DNA from: Octopus bimaculoides
Lineage: Eukaryota
Length of the DNA: 64,000 bases
Reading direction: 5' to 3'
Assembly (NCBI RefSeq): GCF_001194135.2
Contig: NC_068990.1
Span: forward strand, 40,609,399-40,673,398
The notes beneath the pieces were generated by a model, which made no database searches, was not told the origin of the DNA, and was given only the letters and a program-made list of their open reading frames with translations. Position numbers and translations under genes: made by a program. Each line of letters opens with the position of its first letter. Position 1 is the stretch's first letter. Shown here piece by piece: positions 335-60,576 of the stretch.

Positions 335-393
335 NNNNNNNNNNACACACACACACACACACACACACAGACACACACACACACACACACACA
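291..393. repeat. (CA)n microsatellite with an internal 10-N gap
   Basis: Read directly; the gap is at 335-344. Confidence 0.95.
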
Positions 394-8025: not shown

Positions 8026-10539
8026 CAATTGCCGATAAATATCAAAGAAATATGTACAATGCATACACAAATGAAAATTGACTTTACTGGGGCTTGAAGT
8101 AATAAAGTATGAGGTACTAAGCTGGTTAGCTTAAAGTTATCTAACCCAACATTCTGTTTGTGCTTGGTGAGTTTGTGTATGTTTAATAGAATCTTATACA
8201 AATTTGCATTCAGAGATGCACACACACAAAGTGAGGAGGGGGGAAATCAAAGGGAGATAAGATACATTCTCTTAAAACAGTTCAAGTTCAGGATGAAATG
8301 TTTTCGATGTCCATTATTTAACATCACAGCTTTTTTATTTTGTTTTATATAGTTTATGCCTAGAATACAATAGCAAATATTTAAAGAGATCCTCGGTAGG
8401 GTAACCTTACTGTAAGTAGTGAAAATGACTTGGTTAATCTTGTCAAAATTGGAACCATTCTGTCTCTGAACATTACATTTATTTTGGCCATGGGTTCTTT
8501 TGTTGTTGTTGTTGTTGTTTGTATTTGTGTGTGTGTGCATTATAGTCATAGTTTGGTTCTGCTGATAATGTTTTTATAGTTTGCTACTTTCACATCTTCC
8601 AGAAAAACCTTACTTTCTGAAAAATTGCTATGCACACACACACACTCACATTCATATCTAAAAGGATCACCATACACAGCATATGGGAAATGGTTCATTA
8701 ACTGCAAACTTTTTCACATGTATATTCAGTATACATATATATATANNNNNNNNNNNNNNNNNNNNNNNNNNNNNNNNNNNNNNNNNNNNNNNNNNNNNNN
8801 NNNNNNNNNNNNNATATATATATGCACACACATGTAGAAAATGCTTATATACTCAATAACTTATTGAATATACATGAATTGATGTATAAAAAAATTGTGT
8901 TCACACTGACATGCTCGAACATGCACGCTTGTAATTAACTTTTTTTTTTAAATGTTTAAATAGAAAAATATATAGTTTTAATTTGAAAGAAAAATGAGAT
9001 GAATTTAAATTAAAACAACTTATGTTCTAAACATTTTATTGCTTGCATAAACAACATTGTCTGCTACCTTCTCATTGTCTCTGGTCAGTGAAGAGTAAAA
9101 ATTAATTTATACAGAATAACTTCAAGGACTGTAGTGGGGGTTAACTGGTTCCTTTCTGCTCATACTTTTTCTCATGTCACCAGGCTTACTACAGTAAACA
9201 CATCCATTTTAAACAAGTGTTTCAAAATATAGTATACTTTTTGTCCAGTATGTGAACTTAAATTACCTAAATGCTGAGAAAGTCTTCATTTGGCAGTCTA
9301 CTTTTATTAAAATGGCAAAGGGGAACTGAAATAGAATTCAAGATCAACTTCTACTTGATAGTTAAAAATAGGTGTTATTTTTTAAGCTTTTTATTCTCTT
9401 CTTCTAACGTATCTTCTTGATATTTTTGCCCTGCTCTTTTCTCTCTTTCTTCCCTACCCAAGACTATTTGAGCAGTTCTCAAGTAAATGATATGCTAGAA
9501 ATGGTAGTAGAATTTCAATAGCAGCAACTGCAGCTGCTATTACAGCTGTAGGTATAGTCCCTGACAAAAGAGAAAAAACAAAATTAGATTTTCTTTTTCT
9601 AGAAGAGAAAAGGCCAAACAGTTTCTTCCAGTTGTCAATATTTTCTTCCTTGTTTTTCATTTATATACCATATATTTTAGTTTGCTCTGTTTCACTTTGG
9701 TTTAATGATGTGTTAATATTTTTATTCATTTATTGAACCATTTGTAAGAATTGATGACATTTAAATTGTAGCCATATTTTTCACATTTTCAAAGATCAGG
9801 CCATTAGTTACTCATAATCTATGAAATTCCTAGTTAATTTGTTTTAAATTTTAGAAGTTTTACCAAAGCATCATGTTTGGTAGGGACATATTACCTGATA
9901 GTAAACTTTAATTCCTTTTTAGGGCAGGTCTAATAAGCATTCACTGTCAACAATATATAAACTGACTGGATTAGTATTAGGTGGTTTCCTTGGCATATAC
10001 ACCGTTCAGCTAGTTTCACAGTGTAAAGTTTGCATGGGAGGGGACTAATTTTGCCCTGTATAATTTAATAAATATCTGTTCTTATCATATTCTTGAGACA
10101 ACATTGGTTATCTTGTCCCTCCCTTTTTTTCTTCTGTGCATGTAAAATTATTGCAACTTCATATTTTTCAAAATAATTTTTAGTAGAAGTTAATAATAGA
10201 ATTCTGAGAATTTATTTCTGTTAGAATGCATGGATGTCTTTACATGATGGTGATTGAGAATAGAATATCTTTCTGAAAAGTGGGCTCATAAAATTTTTTT
10301 GTGAGATTAGTAGATTCTTACTATCTGTTCTAAAATTTAACTATACACCATGATATAATTTGTTTCATTATATCATGTATGCATATATGTGTATGTATGT
10401 ATGCACCAGTGCCATCATCATGATCATCAGGTCAGTATCTATTTTTCCATCCCTTCATGGATCACAATGAATTTGTTAGAGATTTTCTGCAGTTGGATGC
10501 ACTTTGTCACCAGCATACACACATACATATGTATGTGTG

Positions 10540-11639: not shown

Positions 11640-12230
11640 TTGCTGTTGCTGCTGCCTAGGTGAAAAATGCTTAGCAACATTTTGCCTGTCTTTACATTAT
11701 GAGTTCAAATTTCACCTCAGTTGACTTTGTCTTTCATCCTTTCAGGATCAGTCAGACCAGTACCAGTCAAGCACTGGCGTTGAGGTAAAGGACTAGTCTC
11801 CTCCTCCAAAACTGATGGCCTTAGCAAGCTTGCAGAATTGTCAGCACACAAGACAAACTGCTTAGCTGCATTTTGTCCATCTTTATACATTCAGAGTTTA
11901 AATTCTGCTGTGGTTGGTTGACGTTGCCTTTCATCTTTTCAGGGTCGATGTAATCAAACTAGTCCCCTCCCCTAAGATTTTTGGCCTTGTGCCTATGATA
12001 GGAAAGATTATTGTTGTTGTTGTTTTTGTTACAATTATTACAATTGATGAGCTAGTAGAGTTATTAGTGTTGAAAAAAATTCTTGTTTTTTCTGGCTTTT
12101 TTGCATTCTGCTCAAATTCCACTGGGGTCAGCTTTGCTTTTTGTACTTTCGGCCACTAAAATAAAGTACTATTGAAGTACTGAGGTTGATGGTATTGATT
12201 AAATTCCTCCTCACAAAGCCATTATTGATG
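11640..12230 (+). mobile_element. SINE family 1, three head-to-tail copies
   Basis: Three successive units (about 11659-11825, 11826-12020, 12049-12225), each with a gagttcaaatt-like B box, a ctttgcctttcatc core and a tail. Confidence 0.8.
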
Positions 12231-13148
12231 GTGTTGGTGGTGGTAGTTATTTCATTCCTCTGTATTCCAAGTCCAAATCTTATTGTAGGCTGACTTCCTT
12301 TGACCATGTTGATCATTAGATACCAGAAGTTTAACCATTTAATTGTCACCCTCCTTTTACAAAATTAGCCTGATTTTTCAGGAGATAATTCTCAGGTGAT
12401 GATATTCTGCTTATTTGTTTGCTTGATTGATTGTTACGTTTTAAACAACCTGACTTAGGAACAAAGTCAAAGACGTATACAGTCATTAGTATAATGAAAA
12501 AATATTATCATAGGTAGTAGCATTGTGAGAGAAATGGTAGGAGAGAAGGAAAATACTGTATGATATTTCATGTTTCATATTTAAAAATCAGTGGATCAAC
12601 TTCGTAATTTCATCCTTCCTTGATCAATAAAGTAAGTAGTGATGCTATTCATTACTGTTTAATTGGTTAAACATCCTTCAAATTTGTGGCCTTGTACCAG
12701 TGTAAAAGAACATTAGTTTAAGTGGCATAAGCTGACTTTATTTGATATCTTAAGTTATTGCAGTGGAAATTGTTCAAGGTTTGATTAAATCACCTATTCC
12801 TCATCTGAGTGAATTTGCAAACTTTAGTCAATGTTACAAATCATTATTTATGTTATTGTCATTATGGTGCCTATTACATCTTATGTGCTCTCTCACATAA
12901 GATGTATTGCTATTTTTGGTCAAATTTTGGATTTCATGGATTATAAGTCGTAACGAATACATATTTCTACATAGCAGAATGAAAAAGGGTAAATATAGTA
13001 TCCTTAAGAGGTTGCATACCAAGTTTCAATACCATTGACTAATATCTTGTGGTTCAGCATTGTCTATGAAGAGAACAGGTGTGTGAACTTTTCTCCAGTG
13101 ATGCTGCGACGGTCGTTGCATGTGGATATACAGCGTACTTGTGTGAAG

Positions 13149-13407
13149 TTTTCCATGAAACGAAAAGAAGTCAGCAAAAACATAAGTTCAAAAACATCCA
13201 ATAAAACAAATGAAATTCCCAGAACTATCTTCTGCCTGTGATTGCACCGCTGTTATGTCAATGATGACCGAACTTGTAGGAAGAGCAGCAGCATGGTCTG
13301 ACACACCGGTGCAATCACAGGCAGAAGATAGTTCTGGGAATTTCATTTGTTTTATTGGGTGTTTTTGAACTTATGTTTTTGCTGACTTCTTTTCGTTTCA
13401 TGGAAAA
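13149..13407. repeat. Near-perfect inverted repeat: 101-bp arms, 57-nt loop
   Basis: 13149-13249 is the reverse complement of 13307-13407 with one mismatch (catcc vs caccc, a G-U pair in RNA). Confidence 0.95.
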
Positions 13408-13502
13408 TGGAATTGGAAAATCTACGTCTTTACCTGCGTCTTTAATCAGATTCCAATGGACACTATCAGTAGACAGAAATGATCACAGCACTAATCAAAA
13501 AC

Positions 13503-13893
13503 CATGAGCAGGGCCATGTTCAAGAACTAGCATGGAGTCGCATAGAGTAGGCTTGAACGCTGTAATAAAGGGAAATCTGTATGACCATTCAAAATTCCAA
13601 CCCTAAACTTTGCTACCACAAACTACCTGGACATAATTAACTGGCAGGTCACTATTGTTACTGAATCACCTCTAACAGGCATTTTCCAATGAAGAAATCT
13701 ATACCTTCGTTCAACAGCAGCATTTGATGCAACTTGAAAAATTACTGTGCCACACCCAAGCTGTGTAAAATTCATGACAGAAGCATAATCTAATGTCTGT
13801 GGTGAGAACAGTTGAGATGGTTTCATTAGGGGTTGAATCGAATTGAGAGAAAAAATTCCAGTGTTCAAGACAAAAAGGGACTTCAAATTGAAA
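13503..13893 (+). pseudogene. Degenerate C-terminal fragment of a DNA transposase (hAT-superfamily-like, possibly hATm group)
   Basis: Across stops and frameshifts it reads HEQGHVQELAWSRIE*A*...FKIPTLNFATTNYLDIINWQVTIVTESPLTG...CHTQAV..MTEA*SNVCGENS*DGFIRG*IELREKIPVFKTKRDFKLK. This matches the 'FKIPxLNFxAxxY-LIxW...TEPPLT...PCHTQAVERxVKLVTEAS..VCG...RDGFIR' transposase motif series as I remember it. The family label is a recollection. Confidence 0.75.
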
Positions 13894-14314
13894 GGTAATA
13901 CAGCAATAATCAATTAGAATTGTTTAGTTTTAGCTATTTTAAACTCAACAAACAATTAGCATTATGACGTTTTAGGAATTTCCAAAACAACAAATCTTTG
14001 ATTGTTCCATTCTTTATTTGAGAGTGAGATACTAATTCTCGTCTACAAAAAAAAATTAATTGGCTTTATTACTGGAACGAAAAGGAATGTACTACAACAA
14101 TTCATATTATTTAGTTACATGGAATTATTTTGAATAAATTGGAAATGTTAATTATTTTTATCACCAAAATGTGTCAAGAATCAAAAATTGGTTTACACGT
14201 AATTTTATTTTAATGTGTGTGTAATCTAGACCTCATGTAACACATATATTCGGTGGCCTAGTGTTAAAAATAATAAAGAAAACAAAGTCGAAAAGTCTAT
14301 TTATTTCACATAAT

Positions 14315-14566
14315 TTCAAAATTTCAAGTGCATTGCGGAGCCTGAAGATATAAATTTTAGAGCTTGAGATTTTAACACTCTTGTTTTTAAAGGATTTCGC
14401 ATAAGAAAGTCGATTCGCAACAATGAATGTAGAAAATAAAATGAGGAATGGCAAACGTGTTATAAATTGATTTTTCGCTCATTATTCAAAATTTCAACTG
14501 GGCTGCGGAGCCTGAAGATATAAATTTAGGAACTTAAGATTTTAACACAGTTGTTTTTAAAGGATT
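14315..14566. repeat. Two 82-bp direct repeats 170 bp apart (subterminal repeats of the hAT-like element)
   Basis: 14315-14396 and 14485-14566 share ttcaaaatttcaa...tgcggagcctgaagatataaattt...agattttaacac..ttgtttttaaaggatt. Confidence 0.9.
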
Positions 14567-15648
14567 CCTCAATAAAAAATATATTCTTGAAAACGTATTT
14601 CGAAAACCTGTGTAAAATGTACCCTTTTTTTATCCACCCTAGTGAATAGTGTAGTCAGTGTAGCTACAGGAATCAGATCAGTAGAAGTGAAAAAGATTGT
14701 GAAGGATATACTTATTTTGGTTCTTATTTTTCTTTATCCCCAATAATAATAATAATGATTTCTAAGTTTGGCTCAAGGCCACTGAGTGAAAGTAGTGGAT
14801 TAATGGAATTGTTAAAGTGGTGGGTGAGATGTCTGGCAGCATCTGTTCTGAGCTCCTGGGTGGTAATCTGTTGTCTCATTTAAATTCACCACTTATTCTT
14901 GGGTGCTCTTAGCAGAGTCACACCTTAAATAGTCAGGCCTGACTTCTAGTTTTAGGATAGAATCTCTCTCTCTCTCTCCTTCCCTCCAGTCTTGTGAGTC
15001 CCAAAAAAGAAAAAAAGAATTAAAGTTATCTCTACAGATTTTTTATAGAATTTAGAGTCAGCACTGAAAATTATGGTCTTTTGTATGCAAATACGTCTTT
15101 GTAAACAATGCAGTCAGTAACAGAAAAATAAGTAATGGGTGTATATGTATATTTGAGGGGTTATTGCTCCTTCTTCAACATTGCGTTCAACTCATTAACC
15201 ATTTAGGGGAAAATTTTAAAAAGTGATTGAATCCTACTGCTAACACAGATAGGACACAGTATTGGCTTACAAAGCCTTCAATATATGTGGTTGTGTATTA
15301 TGATTTCATAGCAAAATACAGTGTCCCTACCAGCAATAAATAGAGCTATGCAATGTAGAGAAAAAAATTTTGGAAAAAGTGCTGTCAGAAAACTCCTATT
15401 TTGAATAGCACAGAAAAAAACAAAGCAAAAAAAAAATTGCCACAAGGCAATTAAGACTAACCCCATAGTGCACCTGCTACACATTTCCTATGTGAATAAT
15501 TGCAATTTGTTTTAACTAGGACCAGGGCTTATAATAAAGAAGAATATGACCATGTTAATTTTAACATTTTACTCAAAACTCAATTTGAGACTTGGATGAT
15601 GATAGTTTTCTACAAAATGAAAATCATATTTATACTTGTTAATTTGTT

Positions 15649-19633: not shown

Positions 19634-20250
19634 GCTCTTTATGGTCTGAATTCAAATCCTGCTGAGGTCAACTTTACATTTCATTCCTTTGTAGTCAATA
19701 AAATACAGTACCAGTCAAGTGTTAGATTCAATATAACCAACTAATCCCACTCCCCTCAAAATTGCTGACCTGGTGCCTAAGTTATTATTATTATTATCTA
19801 AGGTGGCGAGCTGGCAGAATCATTAGCATGCCAAATGGAATGGTTAGTGGCATTTCATCTGTCTTTACATTCTGAGTTCAAATTCAACCAAGGTCGACTT
19901 TGCCTTTCATCCTTTCGGGGTCGATAAATAAAATACCAGTTGAATATTGAGGTTGATGCAATTGACTAGTCCCCTCCCCCACAAATTTCAGGCCTTGTGC
20001 TTCCAGTAGAAAAGATTATTATTATTATGATTATTATTATAAGGCAGTGGATTGGCAGGTTCGTTAGAGTGTCAGAAAAAATGCTTTGTGGCATTCCTTC
20101 TGATTCTTTACACTCTGGGTTCAATTCTTACCATTGCTAACTTTGTCTTTTAGTCCTTCAGGTTGATAAAATAAAGTACTGAGATTGGCTAAACTCCCTC
20201 CTCCCATAAACTGTTGGCAAATTGCCTAAATTAGAAACGATTGTTGTTTA
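19634..20250 (+). mobile_element. SINE family 1, three head-to-tail copies (best copy 19800-20040)
   Basis: The best copy has an A-box-like TGGCAGAATC (19812), a B-box-like GAGTTCAAATTC (19874), the core gtcgactttgcctttcatcctttcggggtcgataaa and the tail aaatttcaggccttgtgc..agaaaagatt(att)n. Confidence 0.88.
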
Positions 20251-21125: not shown

Positions 21126-21857
21126 TATAATAATAATATAATAATAATAATAATCCTTTTTACTATAGGCACAAGGCCTGAAATTTGTGGTGGGGGTTAA
21201 GTCAGTTACATTGACCCCAGTGCTCAGCTGGTACTTATTTCATCAACACCAAAAGAATGAAAGGCAAAGTCGACTTTGGGAGAATTTGAACTCAGATTGT
21301 AAAGACAGGCAAAATGCCACTAAGTATTTTACTCAGTGTGCTAATGATTCTGCCATCTTGCCACCTTACAAAAGTAAATGCTGGAATAAATAAGCAGTAA
21401 TGATTACAAAGTTGGCACAGAGTTAGCAGTTTTTGAGTAGATGGGGAAATTGATTACATCAGCTACCAGTGCTCAAATGGTACCTATTTTATCAAACCCA
21501 AGAGGATGAAAGACAAGGTTGACCTCAGAATATAAAGATGAATGAAATGCTACTAACATTTCTGCCAGCTCGCCACTTTATGGATAATAGCATACAATAA
21601 TATGCAAATCAAAAAGCTGCAGCTACTATTTGAGAGCTGCATAAAGATATCTGTCTCAGAATTGTTAACTTAAACTATTACAATAATTTTTTTATTCATA
21701 TGCCTATCATAATAACAGCAGCAGTAAGGTTGATACCATCAATCTCAGTACTTGGCTGGTACCTTAATTTATTGATTCCCAAAAGATGAAAAATATGTTG
21801 ATCTTGGTGGGATTCCATCTCTGAATGTAAATCTGCTGGAACAAATACTGCAAAGCA
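21126..21857 (-). mobile_element. SINE family 1, three minus-strand copies (21126-21368 full length, 21402-21580, 21727-21857)
   Basis: Reverse complement of the same consensus: aatcctttttactataggcacaaggcctgaaatttg...gaaaggcaaagtcgac...aatttgaactcag...gattctgccatcttgccacctta. Confidence 0.85.
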
Positions 21858-23745: not shown

Positions 23746-26393
23746 ATGCCTTGTATTGTGGCATGTTTTACATCCCTTTTCATTCTGAATTTAAATTCTG
23801 CCAGAGTTAACTTCACCTTTTATCTGTGATACTAATTAAATTTAATTTGTACTACAAAACCCCACAAAATGTAAGGTCTTTTAGCTAATGTAAGAAATTA
23901 TTATTGGCATATATGCTCATCATTTTTTACATCAATTTGATAGTTAATCAAAATAGGTGGTGTTGCAACAGGCCTGAAATGACTGAGGTCATCAATTAGA
24001 TTTCCACAATCTCTTAGCAATAGACTTGTATCTGAAATTTCAAGTGGACAGCAATGTCCCAATTTTGGGGAAACAAATTTTATTTAATTTCAGTAGCCTA
24101 ACCTCATTTTACATTTATTTGTAACCTAATAAATTGTCTTCTCATTGTTTTATATTTATCACATATGATTATAAAGAATTTGATTGTAAATTAGAAATTA
24201 GTTGCTGATGGCTGGCTATATCTCAGGAATCCATTGATGATGACTATAATATCTGAAGCTTATTTATCAACTATGTCTTGGGATTGTTAGGACTATAACT
24301 GTAAAAGTTTTCATCATGATATTATACTGCTTCATTTCATAAAATGATTATCCTGTAAGAATATCTAAATGCAAAATTAAAGTTATAGGGATTTGTTGTA
24401 TGAGGCATGCAGGAAGCCTTAAGTTGAAGAAGGATGTTAGGTATTCATGATTTTCTAAGGACTTTCTTGCTCAGTGTAAGCAGTTTTGCAGATAATGAAT
24501 CATTAACTCATCATTGTTCGTTGCACTACATGACACCTTACTCATTTGCTATCAAAAAAAAAAAAAAAGAAAAGAAGTGAAGGAAATGGTCAGTATAGCA
24601 AAGAAAATAGCTTAAAGTGATATCTGTCCCCACTACGTCTCCCCCCCCCCCCCANNNNNNNNNNNNCCCCCCATAAACTCCCAGCCCTGAAGACTTTTAA
24701 CCTTATCTACTCAATGTGCTGATAATTTTACCAACATCTTGTCATTATAATTATAAAAGAAAAATAAACAAACTTCCAGCCTATAAAAATAAGCTTCTTC
24801 CTTAATAATTGTACAACTACTTTACTTTTTGTATTTTTTGTTTCATGTTTAAAAATTTTTTTTATCCATCATTGAAACAGCATTCCCACTCTTCCTCTTT
24901 TAATTCTAAAGACATTCCCCCCTCATCTTTATTCTCTTTCTGCTCTACATTAATGCATCTTCTACCTACATTGTAATGCAGTCTAACAATGTTTTTCTTT
25001 CTTTTCTTTCCAATATTCATTACTTCTTTAAAACCTGGCAATTATCTCTGATATAATACACTTATCTACATCTCAGACTCATGTACACGTATACAGAAAT
25101 GTATACGCACAAATATGCACTTGCATTTTATAAAAGAGCATCCAAAGAATTTTTTTCTATACTTTGTCCTTATAAGGAACTGATCTTTATTTTTTAATTT
25201 TGTTGTCAGTTTTCAATACTACAGAGGTCTATCGTTTTCTTTCTCATTAGAGCTAATGGCTTCTGAATATTTATACAATATTGTAGTTGCATGTATTTTC
25301 AGAAAAAAATATTGGTAATATTAGTATTACCTGTCCCTCCACACATTCCACAAACCTGCATAACTCTGCTGTATGTGTATGTTCATGTCTTTATGTGTAT
25401 CTGCAAATACAGGCAAGAAATTTGTTTCTTGAGTATAGCATTATTTTTTTTTTTAAAGTCTTGTATTGGCCCAAAACTCCCATGTAAAATTGTGTAGCAG
25501 ATGTTCTTGTAACTCAGATGCTCCAGCACTGTCACATAGTGTCACACACACACATCTCCTGGGTGTGCACCAAACCTGCTCAAAGTATTTGAATTATTGC
25601 ACCTTATTACACACAAATCCCTTCTACTTCCTAAACTTTGAGATGGTACAAAAATTTAGTGATATTTGTTGATAAAGTGTTTAGAATGTTCTAATGACCC
25701 AGATATTACTGGCATTGTGGCTTGAAGGTTTCAACTTCTATTTCATTTGACCCATTTTGAGAATATCAGCTGGTTAGTGTTAATCAATATATTTATCTAA
25801 CTTCTGGGAATTTATTTTAGATATATCTCAGTTATTTGCAGAATCGGTTAGTAAGGTAATTTTATATTTTAGTTTTCATATTTCATTGTCCTTTTAAAAT
25901 ATAGTTTAAGGAGTGTATGTATTTAGGTATCAAGATATTTTGCAACAAAAATCTATCTATTCAAATTCACTGTTATGAGAGATCATGTGTATTGGACATA
26001 CTCTGTTTAAAAAGTGGAATTTAAAATGCTTTTGTTAATACTGTAATTTTTTTTCCTCTACATTATTATAATGCTAATCCTATATTCAGGTTAACTATTG
26101 ATAAAATCATTTAAAAGATCTGTTTCATTGACCTATTAGGTTTGTCCTAATAACATAAATTATCTTCATATCTTGCTTTCAGCAAATGTCTCACCATTAA
26201 AATCTATTTACTTGAATTTAACATATATCAAGTCTGAGTTTGGTTATTGGGAAAATCTTAACTTTCATAATTTGAAGTGTATATCAGTGTGTGGTTACCT
26301 CTATGTATTTTTTTTACCCAGAAGCACATTAAGATACTTGCAATGGGCCGAAAATAATCAGTGGTAATGACAAACTGGCATCACAACTTCGAA

Positions 26394-28726: not shown

Positions 28727-31537
28727 TGCAGGTGATATATTTGTCAAACATCCTGTCTTGATATTGTAGGATGTAATAGGCCAGTCGTTCAACATGGATT
28801 CAACTGATTTACTATGACAGAGTTGCATTTAGCCTCAGAAACTTAAGTAAACAACCAAACTTTATATCTTTCCACCATATCTGCATTTTTGCTTGTCCCC
28901 ATCCAAATTAAAATTATCCAGTCAGTGCACATATAAGTTTCTTTTCTTTCATTTAATTATTTACATGTGATAAAAAAGGTATGTTTGCAGTAGTCTTGAA
29001 TTTCTACCTTAATACTTTCACTTGGGTAAGATTGATGAATATATACTTTAACTAATTTCTTGTTTTTATTTATCATTATGATAAGAGAATTCATGTTTCT
29101 TATTATGTAGATGTTCAGTTTCTTTATCTTTTTATTTTTCCTCCAGATCACTAGTGGTGGGACTGGTTAATTTACTTATGAGAAAAAGTTCTGAACTCTA
29201 GGAAATGTTTTAAATTTCTCATAACATATTTTTACTGTTCAACTTCCTTGAATGATTACTCAGTGATAAATCTTGTGTTTATCTATGACTTTTAGTTCTA
29301 CTGATTCAAAAATTTGTGGTTAAGTATAATGGATTTTTTTTATTTGATCTTTTGCTTTCCAGATGAAAATAATTATCTATGGCTAAGGGATTATTCTATC
29401 AAAATAATTACTTTAATAAATAGTTATAAGGGATGATGATTGGCTTCTGTGATGCTTGTAGCTTATATTTCTAGTAAGTCAAAATGTGTGTGTGTACATA
29501 TTTCTGTAGTCGGGTGAGTTTTTCATTTGTATTTAGATATGAGTACATACATTTGCTTTATGTATGCAATATCTTTATGCCTATGTATTTGTGTTTTCTT
29601 CTGTATGGAGACTTTGAATACATAGCCTTTGGTATGGTATGGTAGTGTAAAATTTTATGCATATGTGGAGATATGTTTGGATATGTAGAATGAAGCAGAG
29701 CTATGCTTATGCATCTATGTATGTGCTTCGATAACAAGATGGAAGATATATTTGCTTCTCAACAATATTAGCTCTCTTTACCAAACCAGCCTCGTTTCTG
29801 TTTATCTGATCCCTTTATAGATGCCACCTGGCAGCATCTTCAGACTGTCAAATGGCTATGTATGTCTGTCTCTCTCTTTCTCTAATTAATGATGTCATGA
29901 CTCTAAGGTCAAATAGTAATAGAGGTGTGGGACACTTCTAACCTTGCTATGTGACCAATCATCATTCTCAACGTTATCATTACTGCCATCTTCCTCCTCA
30001 TTCCCATTGTGTTATCATCGTTACTACCATAATCATCATTACCATCACTATTTGCTATTTTTTGCTTCTGCTTCAAGCAGTTCAGTTCAATTTTGATTAT
30101 CTACAGATGATGATGATTGATCTACCTTATTGTATACCTCTGTGTATATACTTGCATCTAGCTTCGTTTTCTGGATCTACATGCATGTTTTAAAATATGT
30201 TCACCTGTGTAATGTTTATGCATTTTTGTATTGTTTGTTAGCCTACGAATTAGTGTTTGTGTATTTATATTTGTGCATCCAGTTGTATGTGCGAATGTAT
30301 CTACTTCCAGCTCAAAAGCTCTATATTTATACATGTATAATACCATAATGCAAAAAAAAACTTATGAAGTTTCTCTTTTTCCTTCAAAGTTTAGCAAGAT
30401 CTACAAAGTACTTTTTCTTTCAATTTGATTGCACTTAACCACTCGGTTATGTGTAAGGGAGATGAGAGAGAGAGGAAGCTGTTTTCTCTTTCCATTTCAT
30501 TTCTATTCAATTTGAACCATTCCTTGTGATGTGCTAATCCCATTAAGGAACAACAGCTTCTGTTGAGTTCTTCATCCTTCTTCTATCAAAGAAATATGAA
30601 GTTGCTGTTGCTATGCAATGAAGGCAGTATTGGTGGAATCAAGTGTATCTTTCAAACAACTTATAGGAATTGGATTTCTTTGTGTATATGTACATACATT
30701 TGTATAGTGGCAGTGTTGTTTTTTGGTATACCTTTTAGAAACTAACTTTCGGAAACTGAATTCTGTGTTGCATTTCGTTGGGTGAAAAGGCATCTTTGGT
30801 TTTGTTTATATACTCTAGAAACTTATACAAATTGGATTTTTATGCATTTTGTTTATGTGTATAGAGTAAGAGCTTACACATATGTACTAGTTAGTAAAAT
30901 AATTTTTATTCTTAATTCATGAAATACTGGAAAAAGAAGTTTCATATCTTAAGATCTTTTAATTAACATTTATATTTTCAATTTTTAAAATGTACATGCT
31001 TTGCAATATTCTTATAAGAAATTGAATCTAATTCATTAAATTTTGGCGGAGTCACTGTCATTTCAATTTACAATGCTATATAACTTCGCTGAACGTTGTG
31101 AATACCTCATAAAAAAATAAATGTGTAATATATTTATAGGTAATGTATTCTAAATGGCTTTTTTAATGTGTCTAGTTTTACTAGTTAATTTAACCTCCAG
31201 TTGAAAACAACTTTTACCAACAGGGATTGATAGAGGATGGATGCTGCCATTTTCAGGTCCTTCTCACTTTTTTGATTTTAATATAAATCCAATAAGTGCG
31301 GTGATTTGAATTTAGTGTCTGAGGGTCAACCTTCAAGGAACTTTTTTATAAGAATAAGCAAAAATGTAGAAGTTTAAAAAAATTCAATCCTAATTAAAAG
31401 ATGGCTGTAAGATCTTAAAATATGAAACTTCTTTTATCATTGTTTCATAAATTCAGAAGAGAATTTATTTTTCTGACTAGTAGATCACATATGTAAATAT
31501 AAACTTTTACTCTTTCTCTATATACCTAACCAGCGGA

Positions 31538-32235: not shown

Positions 32236-32954
32236 ATGAAGTCGAACCGTCGTAAGCAAACAAAACCAAACCGAGTTTCTTATAGTGCAGATTTGGATTC
32301 TGGAGAAACTGTATCAAAACAGTTTGAAAACCCTCCAGACTATGATTTGGAAGACTGTGGAGAGAGGCTGACCAATGATGAAGACGACACCAGCCAACTG
32401 AAGGAAGAGGCTGCTGATAATTTCTCTTCTGGCCAAAGTTGTCCCGAACTCTTACCATCAGTGTCTCCACAACCACAAGTACCACAGTTACAGCAATTAC
32501 CTCCCTTACAACTACCACAACAACAACTAGGGCCAGTGCCACTACCACCACCACCACCACCACCACCACCACCAGCAATACCACTACCACTACCAACATT
32601 ACAACAACTACCACCTCAACAGTTACCTCTCCAACCGCCAGCTCCAATACACATACCACCACAGTTATCACCACCACAGCTGTCAACACAGTTAACTCCA
32701 TTAACCCCACAACATATAGTACCACACCCATTACCTCCACAGCAAATATCACCCTCTCAAATATCACCTTCACAGATATCACCTCCACAGGTATCGCCCC
32801 AACATATACCTGCGCAAATATCCCAACAACAGTCTCCATTACCTTCACCACATCATCAACAACACTCACCACCACAGCAACAATCAACTGTACCTTCACC
32901 AACACCACCACTACCACCACCGCCACCACCACCACAACAATCACAACTACCACC

Positions 32955-32988
<34 letters not shown>

Positions 32989-35900
32989 CCACTGCTGGAA
33001 CCTGAAAAAGAACTACCACCCCAAGAAAACCACATCAGTGGTTTGAAACCAGAACATTGGCAGATATTTCCAACTGAATACCATCGCTTAGCAAATGAAC
33101 TCCAGCAAAGTATAAAACCACAGTCCAATGGTCAGAATGGCTTGGAGCCAACAGGCATACTTACAATAGTGCCCACTTCTGTGCCTCTTTCCAGCATACC
33201 AGGCCTTGATCCCACTGAGGCAGAATCCAAAGACTCAACTGGTGAACTCAGTATAAAAAATGATGGTACCCGGATATTTCATCCTGATGCCTACTGTGAA
33301 ATATGTGATAGAGAATTTTGTAACAAATATTTTCTGAAAACGCATAAAGCTAACAAGCATGGTATCTATGAGAATGCACCGTCACCATTTTCAATGAACA
33401 CATTTCCTTCAATGATTCCTCCCCCTCCACCTCAGCAACAGCCGCCTCAAGAGCAAATTGTCACACCATCATCATATAGATTAGATCCTCAGTCACAGAA
33501 TCAGAAAGTAATTACTGAAGGCAGTGTCAATCAAGACTTGGAAGACTATTGTGAGTTATGTCAGAAGCACTTCTGCAACAAATACTACCTCAAAAAACAC
33601 AAACAGGATGTTCACGGCATTGCGCCGGAGAGCTGCAACAATTTCAGACGTATACGTCCAGTCGACATCCCTACGTCCGTCGCTGTTACCTCGTCATCCA
33701 TTATTGTACCTCAGTCCATGGCCAGCATGCCTAATATGGCTGGTGTTATGGTGTTGAACCCTTTTGTACCTCCTGTAGCGATAATCCCAGCACAGCCTCT
33801 GTTGCACCAGCCCCAGCCGCAGATGCAACCACACAATAATTCAGTCCTTTCTCAGCCCATCGCCACTCCACACATGGAAGCTGCACCAACACAACAGATA
33901 CCATCTCCTCAACAGAAGCAACAACAAATGCAAAACCAGCAGCAGATTCAAAACCAACAACAACAGCAGCAGCCACAACTGCAAAATCCACAGCAACAAC
34001 AACTACAGAATCAACAACAACACTCGCCACTGCAGAACCACCAACAGCAACATCAGCAACAGCATTTGCAGAATCACCAGCAACAATTACAGACTCAACA
34101 ATTGCCGAATCACCAGCAACAACAGTTGCAAACACAGCAGCAACAGTTACAGAATCACCAACAAGTGCTGCAGCAGCAAATACAAAATCACCAACAACAA
34201 ATACAAAACCACCAACAACAACAACAAACGCAACAGCAGCAGCAACCTCTACCACTACCACTTCCACCACCAGCATCTCAGTCCTCACAATCGCAGCCAC
34301 AGCCACCATCATCAAGTTCCGCCCCGCCAGCACAACCCATTGCAAGTGATGCACTTCGTAGTATTGGGGTTCTAAATGCAGAAGCGTACTGTGAGATTTG
34401 TCGTAAAGAGTTCTGCAATAAATATTTCCTAAAGATCCACAAAGCCAACATGCATAATATTTATACTGACGAGATGAAACCACAGCTACAGCAACCACAA
34501 ATTTCGTCCAGAATAGCTACTGAGCCTGACCATCCTGATGTGAAACAGGAACCAGGACTTCTTAGAGACCAAGCAAAAGAAGATGCATTGTCTGGGCGTG
34601 TATCTCAGGAGCAAGGAATGCCTCTTGTCATGAAACCAAAGGACATGGGAATGAAGGAAGCAGAACAGATGAAGGAGCAAATGCTCTCCAAAGAAGCTAT
34701 TAGTTTAAGCAAGGATCTCACAAACCTGAAAGATCCTTCTGTTCTCAAAAATCTAGCACTTATGAAGGGGTCTGGAACAAACGATATTCCTCAAAATCTC
34801 TTGACAAGTACTGGTGTTAACGTGTCCCAGTCCAGCATGATCAGCTCTGTGGTGGGCCTGTCCCAGAACATTCTTTCAAATTCCAACAGTGAGTGTTATG
34901 TCACTTACTGCAACATCTGTAACAGAGAATTCTCAAGCAAATACAGCTACCGCATTCATCGCATGAACGTGCATGGTGTCTTTCATGAAACACCTTCCAA
35001 GAGCCATCCGCTGGATGGTCAGTTACCAAGTGACATGTCTGCACGGATTAAATCCATGCCTGGATTTGTTGGCAGCGACATGAGAAATGGAAACTGTGTC
35101 ACTGACAGCAGCGGAATGCCCACACTCTTTGGAAACATGATTGCAGCAAAGCTTGCAGATCGCGTTACCTGCGACATCTGTAGCAAAGAGTTGTGCAATA
35201 AGTATTTTCTTAAGAACCACAAGCTAAAAGTACATGGAATTGATATCATGTCTGCTGAGAAGGAGAACAAGCAGAGTGAGGGGAAATCAGTTTCTCCTAA
35301 GCTGAATTTGTTTAAAGATAATCAAAAGGAATACATACGTGATATTATTCGAGATCAAGCAAAAGAGCTAGCCTTATTAGAGATGCAGAAAGTTGATATG
35401 AATGGCAAAGAGTTTCTGACCTCAATGTGTAATATTGAGAAACCTGACCACCATGAACTGGTGAAAATGGGCATTGACCCAGAAGCATATTGTGAAATCT
35501 GCAAAAAAGAGCTGTGCAGTAAATATTTTCTCCGAACCCATAAGTTGAACATTCATGGCATCAAGTCAGATAGAATTGACAGTAAAACCATTGACAAGAT
35601 GCAGTTACCTCAGCCAAATAAAAAGTTGATAAATAATTTAGCTGTGAGTATGAGCATGGATGGTTTTCAACCAAATGAAAGTTTTGAAAAACATACATGG
35701 CGATGGAAAGAACCAGTGAATTCTTCTCGTGTGATTTGTGACATCTGTAACAAGGAGTTGTGCAACAAGTATTTCTTACGAACTCATAAGCTGAACAAGC
35801 ATGGAATCTTACCAACAGCTGAGGAACAGAAAATCACTCCAAGCCCTTCCATGCGGTCTTCTCCCGTAGACAGTGGTAGCATTGGTAATGCCTCCCCTGG

Positions 35901-37242
35901 AAGTCAAATTGAGAAGCTATCTGATGGCTTTTCAATTTTACCTAACAGCTTGTCAGATTCCTGCCTCACTAACTCTGATTCCAAATTATTGACCCAGCAT
36001 CAACAAAATCCTGATGAGGTCAAAATCAAAACAGAACAGCTTGATGATACCCCTGTTAACAATAGGTATTACAACCATTTCACTGAAGTTTGCAAACTGT
36101 GTGACCGACGATTTAAAAATGAAAAGTGGCTGCATGCTCATGTTTTAAAGGATCATGGGGTATCTTTACCTTCAGACAATAAATATGTACCTTTAGAAGC
36201 TCAGATGTGCCAGTTCTGTTTCAAAGTATTTCCAAATAGCATTAGCCTTCAGATGCATGTCTTGAATGATCATAAAGCTGAGGTAAGTGCAAAACCTGAT
36301 TTTTCACCACCGCATCACTTTGGTGGTCCTTTGCACAACAGTCTCAGCTGGGGAAATAGCTTACGAAGAAAGTACTCCCGTGGTGGCAAACCAAAGCTAT
36401 ACAGTTGTGTTCACTGTGATTACAAAACAAGGTGGCTTTCAAATATATATTCTCATGAAGAACGCAAACATAGCATTATTAAGGGCACTGTTGGGAGGTT
36501 CACCTGCAAAACCTGCCTTAAATCATTCCTTTATGAACATTCTCTCATCCGCCATATCACAGAATATCATGCAAATGATATAAAAGAATCCCGACCCCGA
36601 CCAAGAGGCATCCGTATCAAAAAGTTTAAGTGTGCCAAATGTGGCATTAAATATTTGAGTAAGAAAGCATGTCAGATGCATATAAGGGAAGTGCATGTTA
36701 AAAAATCCAAGTTGACATCAGATGTTGAGCCATCAGAAGATAATGGATTCTATTCTTGCAGACAGTGTGATTTTACATGCAGTTTTGCAAAATTGTTGCA
36801 AAAGCATATGGCTTTTAACCATGGGCCAAAAATGTCACCTTCTTCAATGCCTTCTGAAGATATTGAAGATTTAAAAGAACCCAATTCATCTTCTCCTCGA
36901 ACTCATAACAACATCAGTAATTATCCTGACGAAGAGCAACTACCTTCAACTAAAGCAACACCTGCAACAGATAATGATGACAACAACAACAACAACAACA
37001 ACAGCAATATTAACAATAGCAGCATCAACAACTGTGACATGGATTCTACTGATGAAAATGATGGTTATGGTTGTAGAAGTACTGACAATAAGTCACAAAC
37101 TCCTTTTATTATGCAAGCATTTCATTTAGAAAATAATTTAGTGGATACAAACTTTATTCCTTCTGTTGTACACATGCCGGTTCGCCAGCGTGTAACAGAA
37201 CCTGTTACACTCACTCTCACCTTGGTACCAGCTGAGCCTTAG
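32236..37242 (+). CDS. Multi-C2H2 zinc-finger protein (1668 aa, 13 fingers, P/Q-rich), probable transcriptional (co)regulator; single coding exon
   Basis: Uninterrupted 5007-nt ORF, more GC-rich than its flanks, with an in-frame TGA at 32224 fixing the ATG at 32236. Thirteen Cx2Cx12Hx4H fingers, each 66 nt, begin at 33295, 33550, 34390, 34909, 35170, 35491, 35737, 36091, 36208, 36406, 36505, 36631 and 36757. N-terminus is MKSNRRKQTKP. No orthologue name is recognised with confidence. Confidence 0.95.
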
Positions 37243-39225: not shown

Positions 39226-40248
39226 NNNNNNNNNNNNNNNNNNNNNNNNNNNNNNNNNNNNNNNNNNNNNNNNNNNNNNNNNNNNNNNNNNNNNNNNNNN
39301 NNNNNNNNNNNNNNNNNNNNNNNNNNNNNNNNNNNNNNNNNNNNNNNNNNNNNNNNNNNNNNNNNNNNNNNNNNNNNNNNNNNNNNNNNNNNNNNNNNNN
39401 NNNNNNNNNNNNNNNNNNNNNNNNNNNNNNNNNNNNNNNNNNNNNNNNNNNNNNNNNNNNNNNNNNNNNNNNNNNNNNNNNNNNNNNNNNNNNNNNNNNN
39501 NNNNNNNNNNNNNNNNNNNNNNNNNNNNNNNNNNNNNNNNNNNNNNNNNNNNNNNNNNNNNNNNNNNNNNNNNNNNNNNNNNNNNNNNNNNNNNNNNNNN
39601 NNNNNNNNNNNNNNNNNNNNNNNNNNNNNNNNNNNNNNNNNNNNNNNNNNNNNNNNNNNNNNNNNNNNNNNNNNNNNNNNNNNNNNNNNNNNNNNNNNNN
39701 NNNNNNNNNNNNNNNNNNNNNNNNNNNNNNNNNNNNNNNNNNNNNNNNNNNNNNNNNNNNNNNNNNNNNNNNNNNNNNNNNNNNNNNNNNNNNNNNNNNN
39801 NNNNNNNNNNNNNNNNNNNNNNNNNNNNNNNNNNNNNNNNNNNNNNNNNNNNNNNNNNNNNNNNNNNNNNNNNNNNNNNNNNNNNNNNNNNNNNNNNNNN
39901 NNNNNNNNNNNNNNNNNNNNNNNNNNNNNNNNNNNNNNNNNNNNNNNNNNNNNNNNNNNNNNNNNNNNNNNNNNNNNNNNNNNNNNNNNNNNNTATTTTT
40001 TTCAAACTGTATATTTGTCTATTTCACTAAATTGTACCAAGCCCATAAGCAGTATACTGTGATGACATAAGGAGAAACCTCGCTAACCAACTTACACTTA
40101 TCAATGAAAGCTGTAGTTATTTCTTGGAACTACAGGCAATTTACCCCTGATTCTCCTTAGATTTCTCTTTTGCTTCAATAACCTAGATGTTCAGAATAGG
40201 GCTTGAATACAGCACCTCTGAAACTTGCTGAATTGAGTCAGTCATCAA

Positions 40249-40281
<33 letters not shown>

Positions 40282-41764
40282 AAAAGGGGTTCACTGATGT
40301 TATGTGAAATGGTTGATCTCCCCACCTTTTTAACTTGAAGTGACTCATGTTCTAATGAGTTGATTCTTGTGGAAAGGAATAATTGTTTTATATTTTTGTG
40401 TTTATTATAGTTTTTTTTATAAATATAAAAAAAAAAGATTTGGTTAAAAATTATTCTTTTTGGCACTTTATATATATATATATGTGTATATATATGTCTG
40501 TGTGTATATATATATATATATATACATATATGTATGTATATATCCCTTGTCCTCTGTTGAAACTTCAAGAGTTGAAGTGAGTTGTTATTTATTTGTGTCA
40601 TGAAGATTATGGGCTTGTGTGGCAATAGGTGTTACTGGGTGTTTCATATTATTATTATTATCATCAAAATCATTGTCATCCTCATCACTTTGATTATCAT
40701 CATCACTATCATTATTATTATCATTTCATAGTGAAAAAATAAACAAAAAAGATATCTCATTGGAAAAAAACTCAACTCATCAGAAGAAAATAGAAACAAA
40801 TTACAAATATATATATATATANNNNNNNNNNNNNNNNNNNNNNNNNNNNNNNNNNNNNNNNNNNNNNNNNNNNNNNNNNNNNNNNNNNNNNNNNNNNNNN
40901 NNNNNNNNNNNNNNNNNNNNNNNNNNNNNNNNNNNNNNNNNNNNNNNNNNNNNNNNNNNNNNNNNNNNNNNNNNNNNNNNNNNNNNNNNNNNNNNNNNNN
41001 NNNNNNNNNNNNNNNNNNNNNNNNNNNNNNNNNNNNNNNNNNNNNNNNNNNNNNNNNNNNNNNNNNNNNNNNNNNNNNNNNNNNNNNNNNNNNNNNNNNN
41101 NNNNNNNNNNNNNNNNNNNNNNNNNNNNNNNNNNNNNNNNNNNNNNNNNNNNNNNNNNNNNNNNNNNNNNNNNNNNNNNNNNNNNNNNNNNNNNNNNNNN
41201 NNNNNNNNNNNNNNNNNNNNNNNNNNNNNNNNNNNNNNNNNNNNNNNNNNNNNNNNNNNNNNNNNNNNNNNNNNNNNNNNNNNNNNNNNNNNNNNNNNNN
41301 NNNNNNNNNNNNNNNNNNNNNNNNNNNNNNNNNNNNNNNNNNNNNNNNNNNNNNNNNNNNNNNNNNNNNNNNNNNNNNNNNNNNNNNNNNNNNNNNNNNN
41401 NNNNNNNNNNNNNNNNNNNNNNNNNNNNNNNNNNNNNNNNNNNNNNNNNNNNNNNNNNNNNNNNNNNNNNNNNNNNNNNNNNNNNNNNNNNNNNNNNNNN
41501 NNNNNNNNNNNNNNNNNNNNNNNNNNNNNNNNNNNNNNNNNNNNNNNNNNNNNNNNNNNNNNNNNNNNNNNNNNNNNNNNNNNNNNNNNNNNNNNNNNNN
41601 NNNNNNNNNNNNNNNNNNNNNNNNNNNNNNNNNNNNNNNNNNNNNNNNNNNNNNNNNNNNNNNNNNNNNNNNNNNNNNNNNNNNNNNNNNNNNNNNNNNN
41701 NNNNNNNNNNNNNNNNNNNNNNNNNNNNNNNNNNNNNNNNNNNNNNNNNNNNNNNNNNNNNNNN
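39226..41764. other. Two assembly gaps (39226-39993, 40822-41764)
   Basis: N runs entered through (TA)n. Other gaps are at 335-344, 8746-8813, 24655-24666 (inside poly-C), 53943-54540 and 59252-60147. Confidence 0.99.
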
Positions 41765-53942: not shown

Positions 53943-54692
53943 NNNNNNNNNNNNNNNNNNNNNNNNNNNNNNNNNNNNNNNNNNNNNNNNNNNNNNNNNN
54001 NNNNNNNNNNNNNNNNNNNNNNNNNNNNNNNNNNNNNNNNNNNNNNNNNNNNNNNNNNNNNNNNNNNNNNNNNNNNNNNNNNNNNNNNNNNNNNNNNNNN
54101 NNNNNNNNNNNNNNNNNNNNNNNNNNNNNNNNNNNNNNNNNNNNNNNNNNNNNNNNNNNNNNNNNNNNNNNNNNNNNNNNNNNNNNNNNNNNNNNNNNNN
54201 NNNNNNNNNNNNNNNNNNNNNNNNNNNNNNNNNNNNNNNNNNNNNNNNNNNNNNNNNNNNNNNNNNNNNNNNNNNNNNNNNNNNNNNNNNNNNNNNNNNN
54301 NNNNNNNNNNNNNNNNNNNNNNNNNNNNNNNNNNNNNNNNNNNNNNNNNNNNNNNNNNNNNNNNNNNNNNNNNNNNNNNNNNNNNNNNNNNNNNNNNNNN
54401 NNNNNNNNNNNNNNNNNNNNNNNNNNNNNNNNNNNNNNNNNNNNNNNNNNNNNNNNNNNNNNNNNNNNNNNNNNNNNNNNNNNNNNNNNNNNNNNNNNNN
54501 NNNNNNNNNNNNNNNNNNNNNNNNNNNNNNNNNNNNNNNNCCTCACCCTTTTATTCCTTCTTTAATTAAAGAAGCTAACAATTAAATCAGAGCTCAAAAT
54601 GCAGTATTTTTACTATTTTGTTACTAATAAATATATTAATAAATGTATGTTTTCATCAACATGTTCATAAACAGTATGTATGTATGTATGTA

Positions 54693-59600: not shown

Positions 59601-60576
59601 NNNNNNNNNNNNNNNNNNNNNNNNNNNNNNNNNNNNNNNNNNNNNNNNNNNNNNNNNNNNNNNNNNNNNNNNNNNNNNNNNNNNNNNNNNNNNNNNNNNN
59701 NNNNNNNNNNNNNNNNNNNNNNNNNNNNNNNNNNNNNNNNNNNNNNNNNNNNNNNNNNNNNNNNNNNNNNNNNNNNNNNNNNNNNNNNNNNNNNNNNNNN
59801 NNNNNNNNNNNNNNNNNNNNNNNNNNNNNNNNNNNNNNNNNNNNNNNNNNNNNNNNNNNNNNNNNNNNNNNNNNNNNNNNNNNNNNNNNNNNNNNNNNNN
59901 NNNNNNNNNNNNNNNNNNNNNNNNNNNNNNNNNNNNNNNNNNNNNNNNNNNNNNNNNNNNNNNNNNNNNNNNNNNNNNNNNNNNNNNNNNNNNNNNNNNN
60001 NNNNNNNNNNNNNNNNNNNNNNNNNNNNNNNNNNNNNNNNNNNNNNNNNNNNNNNNNNNNNNNNNNNNNNNNNNNNNNNNNNNNNNNNNNNNNNNNNNNN
60101 NNNNNNNNNNNNNNNNNNNNNNNNNNNNNNNNNNNNNNNNNNNNNNNATTATGTATATTATATATATTATGCATTATATATATATATAATTATATCTATG
60201 TATTAAATAGATATGCATATTATATATACAAATATGCATATTATATATATATATAATATAATAGATTATATTTATATATATATTATAGATTATATTTATA
60301 TATTATATATATTACATTTATATATAATATATATGTACGTGTGTGTATATATGTGTGTGCGTTTGCAACCAGAAGCTAGTGTGTGCGTGTGTCTGTGTGT
60401 ATGCATACACATATACATACACACACACATGTATATATATATGTATATATATAGCATTGTCACTAGTTAACCTTCTGTTTGGCAAAGATGCCAAACCAAT
60501 GGTGCTTGTATCATGTATGAGTGTGTATATGTGTGAGTGTATGTATTTGTGTGTGTGTATATATATATATATATAA

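What the first reader, a model, noticed from the sequence alone, without database searches (positions are those of the whole stretch)
13149..13407. 101-bp fold-back inversion inside a dead hAT-like transposase: a possible Mu-killer-like hairpin locus
Seen: two 101-bp arms with one G-U-compatible mismatch around a 57-nt loop. The left arm codes ...QMKFPELSSACDCT on the + strand. The right arm plus loop, read on the minus strand, continues the peptide as MKFPELSSACDCTGVSDHAAALPTSSVIIDIT. The structure is therefore A followed by revcomp(A+B), joined at a short CACCG/CGGTG overlap, and the sequence then jumps to the transposase C-terminus. The arms are about 99% identical although the transposase carries many stops. 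Established: maize Mu killer is an inverted duplication of a transposon 5' region whose hairpin RNA silences the family in trans, and long dsRNA is a substrate for Dicer and ADAR. Inference: a template-switch rearrangement that is recent or maintained, and could be a source of endo-siRNA or a hyper-edited stem. The CDACD-R-GVSDRAAA-type motif assignment is from memory.
Basis: partly seen in the sequence, partly recalled or inferred. Interest (0 to 1): 0.7.

Follow-up and report, generated by a model that had tools for sequence, protein, structure and literature searches.

The report
Young inverted duplication in octopus DNA
A 101-105 bp stretch of octopus intergenic DNA is copied backwards right next to itself, forming a near-perfect hairpin; this is a common kind of replication accident, and nothing ties it to a transposase or to a silencing function.

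Summary
Arms 13149-13249 and 13307-13407 pair at 100 of 101 positions. The one mismatch, T13197/G13359, is a G-U pair in + strand RNA. The loop is 57 nt. Allowing a second mismatch gives 105-nt arms and a 49-nt loop. It is the only complex near-perfect inverted repeat in the window.

The window is Octopus bimaculoides GCA_001194135.2, a gapped assembly. The repeat lies mid-contig in repeat-rich, gene-poor DNA, 18.8 kb upstream of the only clear gene.

The interpretation mostly fails. No hAT or other transposase signal was found in Pfam, in PDB sequences, in an exhaustive HMMER search or in two word-index protein searches. The quoted peptides are real translations but have no relatives. The neighbouring 96-aa ORF belongs to an unclassified dispersed repeat.

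A published survey that included O. bimaculoides found no dedicated endo-siRNA pathway in molluscs, which weakens the Mu-killer analogy.

The best reading is one recent replication template switch that made a local inverted duplication with no demonstrated function. If transcribed, it would be one of very many octopus dsRNA-forming loci that ADAR hyper-edits. Assembly artefact, palindromic MITE and ancestral state could not be tested here. Interest is low.

The parts
13149..13249 (.). Left arm of the inverted repeat (101 nt; extends to 13253 if one more mismatch is allowed)
13250..13306 (.). Spacer or loop, 57 nt (49 nt, 13254-13302, in the 105-nt reading); 47% GC against 35% in the arms
13307..13407 (.). 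Right arm, reverse complement of the left arm; 100/101 match, with G13359 opposite T13197
13304..13311 (.). Perfect palindrome CACCGGTG at the inner junction of the right arm. Together with TGT (13251-13253) / ACA (13303-13305) it is a plausible switch point
   Evidence: sequence
13401..13421 (.). Direct repeat TGGAAAAT (13401-13408 and 13414-13421) spanning the outer right junction. There is no target-site duplication across the two outer edges (GTGTGAAG| ... |TGGAATTG)
13623..13913 (-). 96-aa ORF next to the repeat; no Pfam or PDB match. Its N-terminal half lies in a dispersed repeat (window 13758-14243) that is 77% identical at DNA level to a copy on contig L002
11664..12201 (.). SINE-like dispersed repeat fragments with 5 or more copies in the window; context only

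Best explanation
This is a real, evolutionarily young, local inverted duplication in repeat-rich, gene-poor DNA of Octopus bimaculoides. Most likely a replicating strand briefly switched template, to the opposite strand or back onto itself. It copied about 101-105 nt in reverse complement only 49-57 nt from the source, then returned. One such event creates a near-perfect hairpin-forming repeat. The inner switch point lies at the palindrome CACCGGTG and the TGT/ACA microhomology. One or two substitutions have accumulated since. The locus has no demonstrated function and is probably a neutral, possibly unstable, structural variant. If a transcript runs through it on either strand, the RNA would fold into a ~100-bp perfect duplex. 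The expected fate of that duplex in a coleoid is ADAR hyper-editing, not siRNA production.

Shown: the structure, its uniqueness in the window, the absence of detectable transposase or other protein homology, and the genomic context. Inferred: the template-switch origin, the young age and the neutrality.
For: Sharp-edged 101/105-nt reverse-complement copy 49-57 nt from its partner at 98-99% identity. Palindrome and 3-nt microhomology at the inner junction. No target-site duplication and no other copy of the arm in 64 kb, while local SINE-like repeats recur 5 or more times. No protein or RNA family match for the arms, loop or flanks. The repeat sits mid-contig, 4.3 kb from the nearest gap. The internal T/C mismatch is not what a fold-back artefact of a single molecule would give. 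Template switching is documented to create perfect hairpins in one event, with copied tracts of 28-83 nt reported (PMC10710096; PMC5453318). The arms are far less diverged than copies of the adjacent repeat, 1-2% against about 23%.
Against: No outgroup or second assembly could be reached, so the ancestral state without the duplication is not shown, and which arm is the copy is unknown. There is no microhomology at the outer junction. The copied tract is longer than the 28-83-nt examples I found quoted for template-switch events. The assembly contains N gaps and reads could not be inspected. Genome-wide copy number could not be measured, so a rare palindromic MITE is not excluded.
Confidence: 0.6

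Rival explanations
1. Assembly or library artefact. The hairpin was created by chimeric fold-back reads or by mis-resolution of a repeat in the assembly, and does not exist in the animal.
For: The window is a gapped scaffold with seven N runs. From general knowledge, inverted repeats longer than the assembler's k-mer are hard to resolve in de Bruijn graphs. No independent contig carrying ORFs across the junctions is on record.
Against: The repeat is mid-contig, 4.3 kb from the nearest gap. The arms differ at an internal position, T13197 against C, which a single-molecule fold-back cannot produce. A 57-nt unique loop with two distinct junctions would need consistent read support to be assembled.
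Confidence: 0.12
2. A palindromic non-autonomous transposon, either a MITE or foldback element made almost entirely of long terminal inverted repeats, or two inverted insertions of one short element.
For: The overall shape, long arms around a short spacer, resembles palindromic MITEs such as the heavily edited ~200-bp Harbinger repeat of Xenopus (PMC5625713). The surroundings are full of repeats.
Against: No target-site duplication of any length at the edges. No second copy, whole or partial, in 64 kb, while the local SINE-like repeat occurs 5 or more times. No match in protein or DNA scans.
Confidence: 0.1
3. The arms are part of a hAT-like transposase, and the hairpin transcript silences that family in trans, like maize Mu killer, through small RNAs.
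For: The geometry is the same as Mu killer, an inverted duplication giving a long perfect hairpin. A weak by-eye hAT C-terminus-like string, ASNAAVER, lies 270 nt away on the minus strand.
Against: No hAT or other transposase domain at E<=10. The exhaustive HMMER search finds only an anonymous repeat ORF. The arm peptides have no relatives. The order is wrong, because the arms lie downstream of the putative C-terminus on that strand. A mollusc small-RNA survey that included O. bimaculoides found no dedicated endo-siRNA pathway (PMC12479628). No active family was identified, and there is no evidence of transcription.
Confidence: 0.03
4. A transcribed hairpin RNA that is an ADAR hyper-editing substrate or a nascent miRNA-like gene. 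This concerns function and is compatible with a template-switch origin.
For: It meets the published criterion for a dsRNA-forming locus: more than 95% identity over at least 40 bp, inverted, within 2 kb. O. bimaculoides has the highest hyper-editing among the species surveyed, and 0.44% of its random 50-bp loci meet that criterion (PMC5625713). Template-switch hairpins have seeded miRNA genes in primates (PMC10710096).
Against: Transcription could not be tested. No clear gene or large ORF was found within 18 kb. The ~100-bp stem is about three times the preferred miRNA stem length. The best Rfam hit is chance level, mir-140 at 18.7 bits against a gathering score of 70. If it is edited, it is one of a very large number of such loci.
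Confidence: 0.15

Closest known systems
Template-switch mutations (TSMs) that create reverse-complement repeats and hairpins during replication (Loytynoja & Goldman 2017, PMC5453318; Monttinen et al. 2023, PMC10710096)
   Same: A reverse-complement copy of adjacent sequence, a short spacer, sharp boundaries and near-perfect pairing produced in one step, with a palindromic motif or microhomology at a switch point.
   Different: The copied tract of 101-105 nt is longer than the 28-83-nt examples I found quoted. The ancestral state was not observed here, so the four-point reconstruction could not be done.
Maize Mu killer (an inverted duplication of the 5' part of MuDR whose hairpin RNA silences the family)
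   Same: Geometry only: an inverted duplication able to give a long perfect hairpin RNA.
   Different: No identified transposon in the arms, no known active target family, no evidence of transcription, and a host clade with no detectable endo-siRNA pathway (PMC12479628).
Inverted-repeat ADAR substrates (inverted Alu pairs in primates; the palindromic Harbinger MITE in Xenopus; inverted repeats in octopus, PMC5625713)
   Same: A long, nearly perfect intramolecular duplex within 2 kb, in a species with very high hyper-editing.
   Different: Those are usually pairs of dispersed repeats or multi-copy palindromic elements. This looks like a single-copy local duplication, and editing was not tested.
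Drosophila hpRNA loci and mouse oocyte endo-siRNA hairpins
   Same: A long inverted-repeat transcript as a potential Dicer substrate.
   Different: They need a dedicated siRNA Dicer/Ago pathway, which was not detected in molluscs, and no target gene is evident.
hAT superfamily transposons
   Same: Only a weak by-eye resemblance of ...ASNAAVER... in the neighbouring ORF to the hAT C-terminal motif.
   Different: No Pfam hAT dimerisation domain, no catalytic domain, and no 8-bp target-site duplication or terminal inverted repeats identified.

Membership tests
hAT transposase remnant | C-terminal hAT dimerisation domain (Pfam PF05699) and/or RNase-H-like DDE catalytic domain detectable in translation | tested here: not met
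   Pfam at E<=10 on six frames of 12700-14100 and on individual ORFs gave no hit. PDB sequences gave none. Exhaustive phmmer gave one anonymous 58-aa hit only.
hAT transposase remnant | 8-bp target-site duplication and short terminal inverted repeats bounding the element | tested here: inconclusive
   No direct repeat at the edges of the inverted repeat. The boundaries of any larger element are unknown, and the weak inverted repeats nearby are SINE-like fragments at chance level.
Mu killer-type silencing locus | Arms derived from a transposon family that has active members | tested here: not met
A whole-genome search was not possible.
Mu killer-type silencing locus | Read-through transcription giving hairpin RNA that is processed to small RNAs and silences in trans | not testable with these tools
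   No expression or small-RNA data are available. The literature reports no dedicated endo-siRNA pathway in molluscs, including O. bimaculoides (PMC12479628).
Template-switch mutation hairpin | Reverse-complement copy of nearby sequence with sharp ends and near identity | tested here: met
   101/105-nt arms, 98-99% identity, 49-57 nt apart, with no complementarity beyond the edges.
Template-switch mutation hairpin | Microhomology or quasi-palindrome at the switch points | tested here: inconclusive
   The inner junction has the CACCGGTG palindrome and TGT/ACA. The outer junction has no microhomology, only a local TGGAAAAT direct repeat.
Template-switch mutation hairpin | Outgroup or ancestor lacks the inverted copy at the orthologous site | not testable with these tools
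   No other octopus assembly of this region could be reached. The nearest retrievable gene is 18.8 kb away and the flank limit is 10 kb. L002 is a paralogous repeat copy that ends before the inverted repeat.
ADAR hyper-editing substrate | More than 95% identical inverted match of at least 40 bp within 2 kb (criterion of PMC5625713) | tested here: met
   criterion read.
ADAR hyper-editing substrate | Transcribed, with clustered A-to-G mismatches in RNA-seq | not testable with these tools
   No RNA-seq access. ORFs across the repeat are not on record in any assembly, including run assemblies.
MITE / foldback transposon | Target-site duplication and multiple dispersed copies | tested here: not met
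   No target-site duplication and no other copy in the 64-kb window. Genome-wide copy number was not testable.
Known RNA family (miRNA and others) | Match to an Rfam covariance model at its gathering score | tested here: not met
   No hit at gathering thresholds. The best E-value hit is mir-140 at 18.7 bits against 70.

The most novel reading that the evidence does not exclude
The hairpin is transcribed, for example within a long upstream or intronic transcript of the neighbouring polyQ zinc-finger gene. It would then be a lineage-specific regulatory RNA caught soon after birth by template switching: a proto-miRNA or hairpin precursor, or a dedicated ADAR-bound duplex, in a clade known for exceptional RNA editing.
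Probability: 0.04. Interest if true: 0.5.

Novelty: new member of a known kind. Interest (0 to 1): 0.15.

Why it matters
Very little as it stands. It is one more local inverted duplication in a genome where about 0.44% of random 50-bp loci already have a near-perfect inverted partner within 2 kb. If population or sister-species data showed the state without the duplication, it would be a clean and unusually long example of a single-step template-switch hairpin in a cephalopod. It could then serve as a dated natural substrate for studying ADAR hyper-editing of a newborn duplex. It gives no evidence for a transposon-silencing locus.

Tried and rejected
- hAT or other transposase identity. I ran Pfam on six-frame translations with stops masked as X, on single ORFs, and on the minus-strand peptide with the left arm removed. 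I also searched PDB sequences. Nothing matched.
- Exhaustive phmmer of the neighbouring 96-aa ORF. It gave one 58-aa hit, P0001. Its contig L002 carries a paralogous repeat copy next to a different C2H2 gene, and it ends or diverges at about window 13758, before the inverted repeat. It therefore cannot show the ancestral state.
- A 2248-aa composite six-frame query in the word-index protein search found nothing. It did not even recover P0001, so I treat that design as insensitive. A focused 424-aa composite of the ORFs around the repeat also found nothing at E<=1. The 96-aa ORF alone shared no words with any candidate. P0001 is a singleton cluster.
- Exact look-up of ORFs that span the junctions, to get independent contigs. 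None is on record.
- Reaching orthologous DNA through the zinc-finger gene. It is 18.8 kb away and the flank limit is 10 kb, and no gene-like ORF lies closer.
- A JGI metagenome scan with a 24-mer from the arm gave 0 hits, as expected.
- Rfam at gathering and E-value thresholds gave chance-level hits only.
- MITE reading: no target-site duplication and no second copy in the window.
- I prepared wider Pfam scans of 9-18 kb and 11-16 kb but did not submit them. The core 12.7-14.1 kb had already been scanned.

Full report
**Observation.** The inverted repeat exists as described. The repeat finder gives arms 13149-13253 and 13303-13407, 105 nt, 98% complementary, 49 nt apart. A direct comparison shows two mismatches. 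T13197 faces G13359, which is a G-U pair in + strand RNA and an A-C mismatch in - strand RNA. C13250 faces C13306. Outside the arms complementarity drops to chance at once. The CACCG/CGGTG overlap is real, and CACCGGTG at 13304-13311 is a perfect palindrome. The quoted peptides are correct translations. The predicted hairpin has dG -186.7 kcal/mol (z = -25.6) on the + strand and -183.2 (z = -23.3) on the - strand, and none of 200 shuffles does as well. It is the only complex near-perfect inverted repeat in the window. The others are microsatellites or SINE-like pairs at 77-83% identity.

**Where it is.** The 1668-aa ORF at 32236-37242 is encoded exactly on Octopus bimaculoides GCA_001194135.2, chromosome CM046610.1, at about 40.64 Mb. 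The window contains seven N runs, so it comes from a gapped scaffold. The repeat lies in the contig between the gaps at 8746-8813 and 24655-24666, 4.3 kb from the nearer gap. No gene-like ORF of 75 aa or more exists in 1-32 kb. The C2H2 zinc-finger, polyQ gene, 18.8 kb downstream, is the only clear gene. SINE-like fragments lie at 11664-12201, with five or more related copies elsewhere in the window. The stretch 12207-14315 is otherwise unique within the window.

**Is it inside a dead hAT transposase?** I found no support.
- Pfam at E<=10 gave no hAT or other transposase domain on X-masked six-frame translations of 12700-14100.
- Pfam also gave nothing on the 96-aa ORF, on the ORFs through the arms, or on the minus-strand peptide with the left arm removed.
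- PDB sequences gave nothing.
- An exhaustive phmmer search of the 96-aa ORF (13623-13913, minus strand) against 1.84 billion representatives returned one hit, a 58-aa anonymous ORF at 60% identity covering query residues 5-58.
- That hit lies on an ENA 'metagenome' contig, L002. L002 aligns at 77% DNA identity to window 14243-13758, including AT-rich non-coding sequence. It sits beside a different C2H2 gene, so it is a paralogous copy of a dispersed repeat and not the orthologue.
- L002 diverges or ends before the inverted repeat, so it says nothing about the ancestral arrangement.
- Two word-index searches with the repeat's ORFs found nothing. The first was probably insensitive.

By eye, ...QVASNAAVERRYRFLHWKMPVR... 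on the minus strand recalls the hAT C-terminal motif. It lacks the conserved F-S and has no statistical support. On that strand the inverted repeat lies about 215 nt downstream of the ORF's stop. That order does not fit arms that encode an internal part of the same transposase.

**What it most likely is.** The anatomy is a sharp-edged reverse-complement copy of about 101-105 nt lying 49-57 nt from its source. The arms are 98-99% identical. There is no target-site duplication, no other copy in 64 kb, and a palindrome plus 3-nt microhomology (TGT/ACA) at the inner junction. This is what a replication template switch produces. Such events are documented to create perfect hairpin-forming repeats in a single step, with copied tracts of 28-83 nt reported in primates (PMC10710096; PMC5453318). 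Arm divergence of 1-2% contrasts with about 23% between copies of the adjacent repeat, so the event is recent. Long inverted repeats with short spacers are known to be fragile (PMC3855049, listed). From that I infer that youth explains the high identity more simply than selection does. I could not determine which arm is the copy. Both arms continue in open frames into their own flanks, and no outgroup sequence was reachable.

**Function.** Nothing indicates one. No transposon was found and transcription was not testable. A survey of mollusc small RNAs that used this very assembly found miRNAs and piRNAs but no dedicated endo-siRNA pathway (PMC12479628).

The ADAR idea fits the host better. O. 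bimaculoides has the strongest hyper-editing signal among the surveyed animals. In that survey, 0.44% of random 50-bp loci have a more than 95% identical inverted partner of at least 40 bp within 2 kb (PMC5625713). This locus meets that criterion, but so do a very large number of others. Its roughly 210 nt of arms in 64 kb (0.33%) is about the genome-average density. That published figure was computed without low-complexity filtering, so the comparison is rough. Rfam has no match beyond chance.

**Rivals.**
- An assembly artefact cannot be excluded without reads. It is disfavoured by the mid-contig position, the unique 57-nt loop and the internal arm mismatch.
- A palindromic MITE is disfavoured by the absence of a target-site duplication and of any second copy. 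It needs a whole-genome search to exclude.
- The Mu-killer-like reading is the least supported.

**Verdict.** The structural reading, a recent fold-back or inverted duplication, is supported. The hAT and Mu-killer framing is not. This is an ordinary, probably neutral, new instance of a known mutational product in a genome rich in such structures.

Noticed in passing
window 32236-37242 (+): A single uninterrupted 1668-aa ORF with long polyQ/polyP tracts and many C2H2 fingers of the recurring form C-x2-C-...F-C-N-K-Y-F-L-K-x-H-K-x-x-x-H-G (Pfam zf-C2H2_4, 7e-14). It is the only clear gene in the window and identifies the source as Octopus bimaculoides GCA_001194135.2, CM046610.1.
   Followed up: partly
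L002 (ENA ERZ23487155, BRAZ22-1 ... METAG-scaffold_3224), 9700-10150 and 1-230: A contig deposited as metagenome carries a 77%-identical copy of the repeat at window 13758-14243, an (AACCTA)n-like satellite and an 810-aa C2H2 zinc-finger gene. It looks like octopod or other cephalopod host DNA inside a metagenome assembly.
   Followed up: partly
window 13623-13913 (-): A 96-aa open frame within an unclassified dispersed repeat. It contains ...ASNAAVERRYRF..., faintly reminiscent of a hAT C-terminus, but has no Pfam, PDB or HMMER support.
   Followed up: yes
window 14315-14436 and 14485-14606: A local direct duplication of about 122 nt at 79-85% identity, 170 nt start to start, inside the same dispersed repeat. 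L002 has one unit.
   Followed up: no
window 19794-19981 / 21186-21373 and 30882-30958 / 31409-31485: Inverted pairs of SINE-like repeats (188 nt at 77%, 77 nt at 83%) between the hairpin and the zinc-finger gene. These are older potential dsRNA-forming pairs of the usual kind.
   Followed up: no
window 335-344, 8746-8813, 24655-24666, 39226-39993, 40822-41764, 53943-54540, 59252-60147: Seven N runs. The four large gaps and the first small one are flanked by (TA)n/(TG)n microsatellites, which explains the very low GC bins (16-19%) in the composition profile.
   Followed up: no
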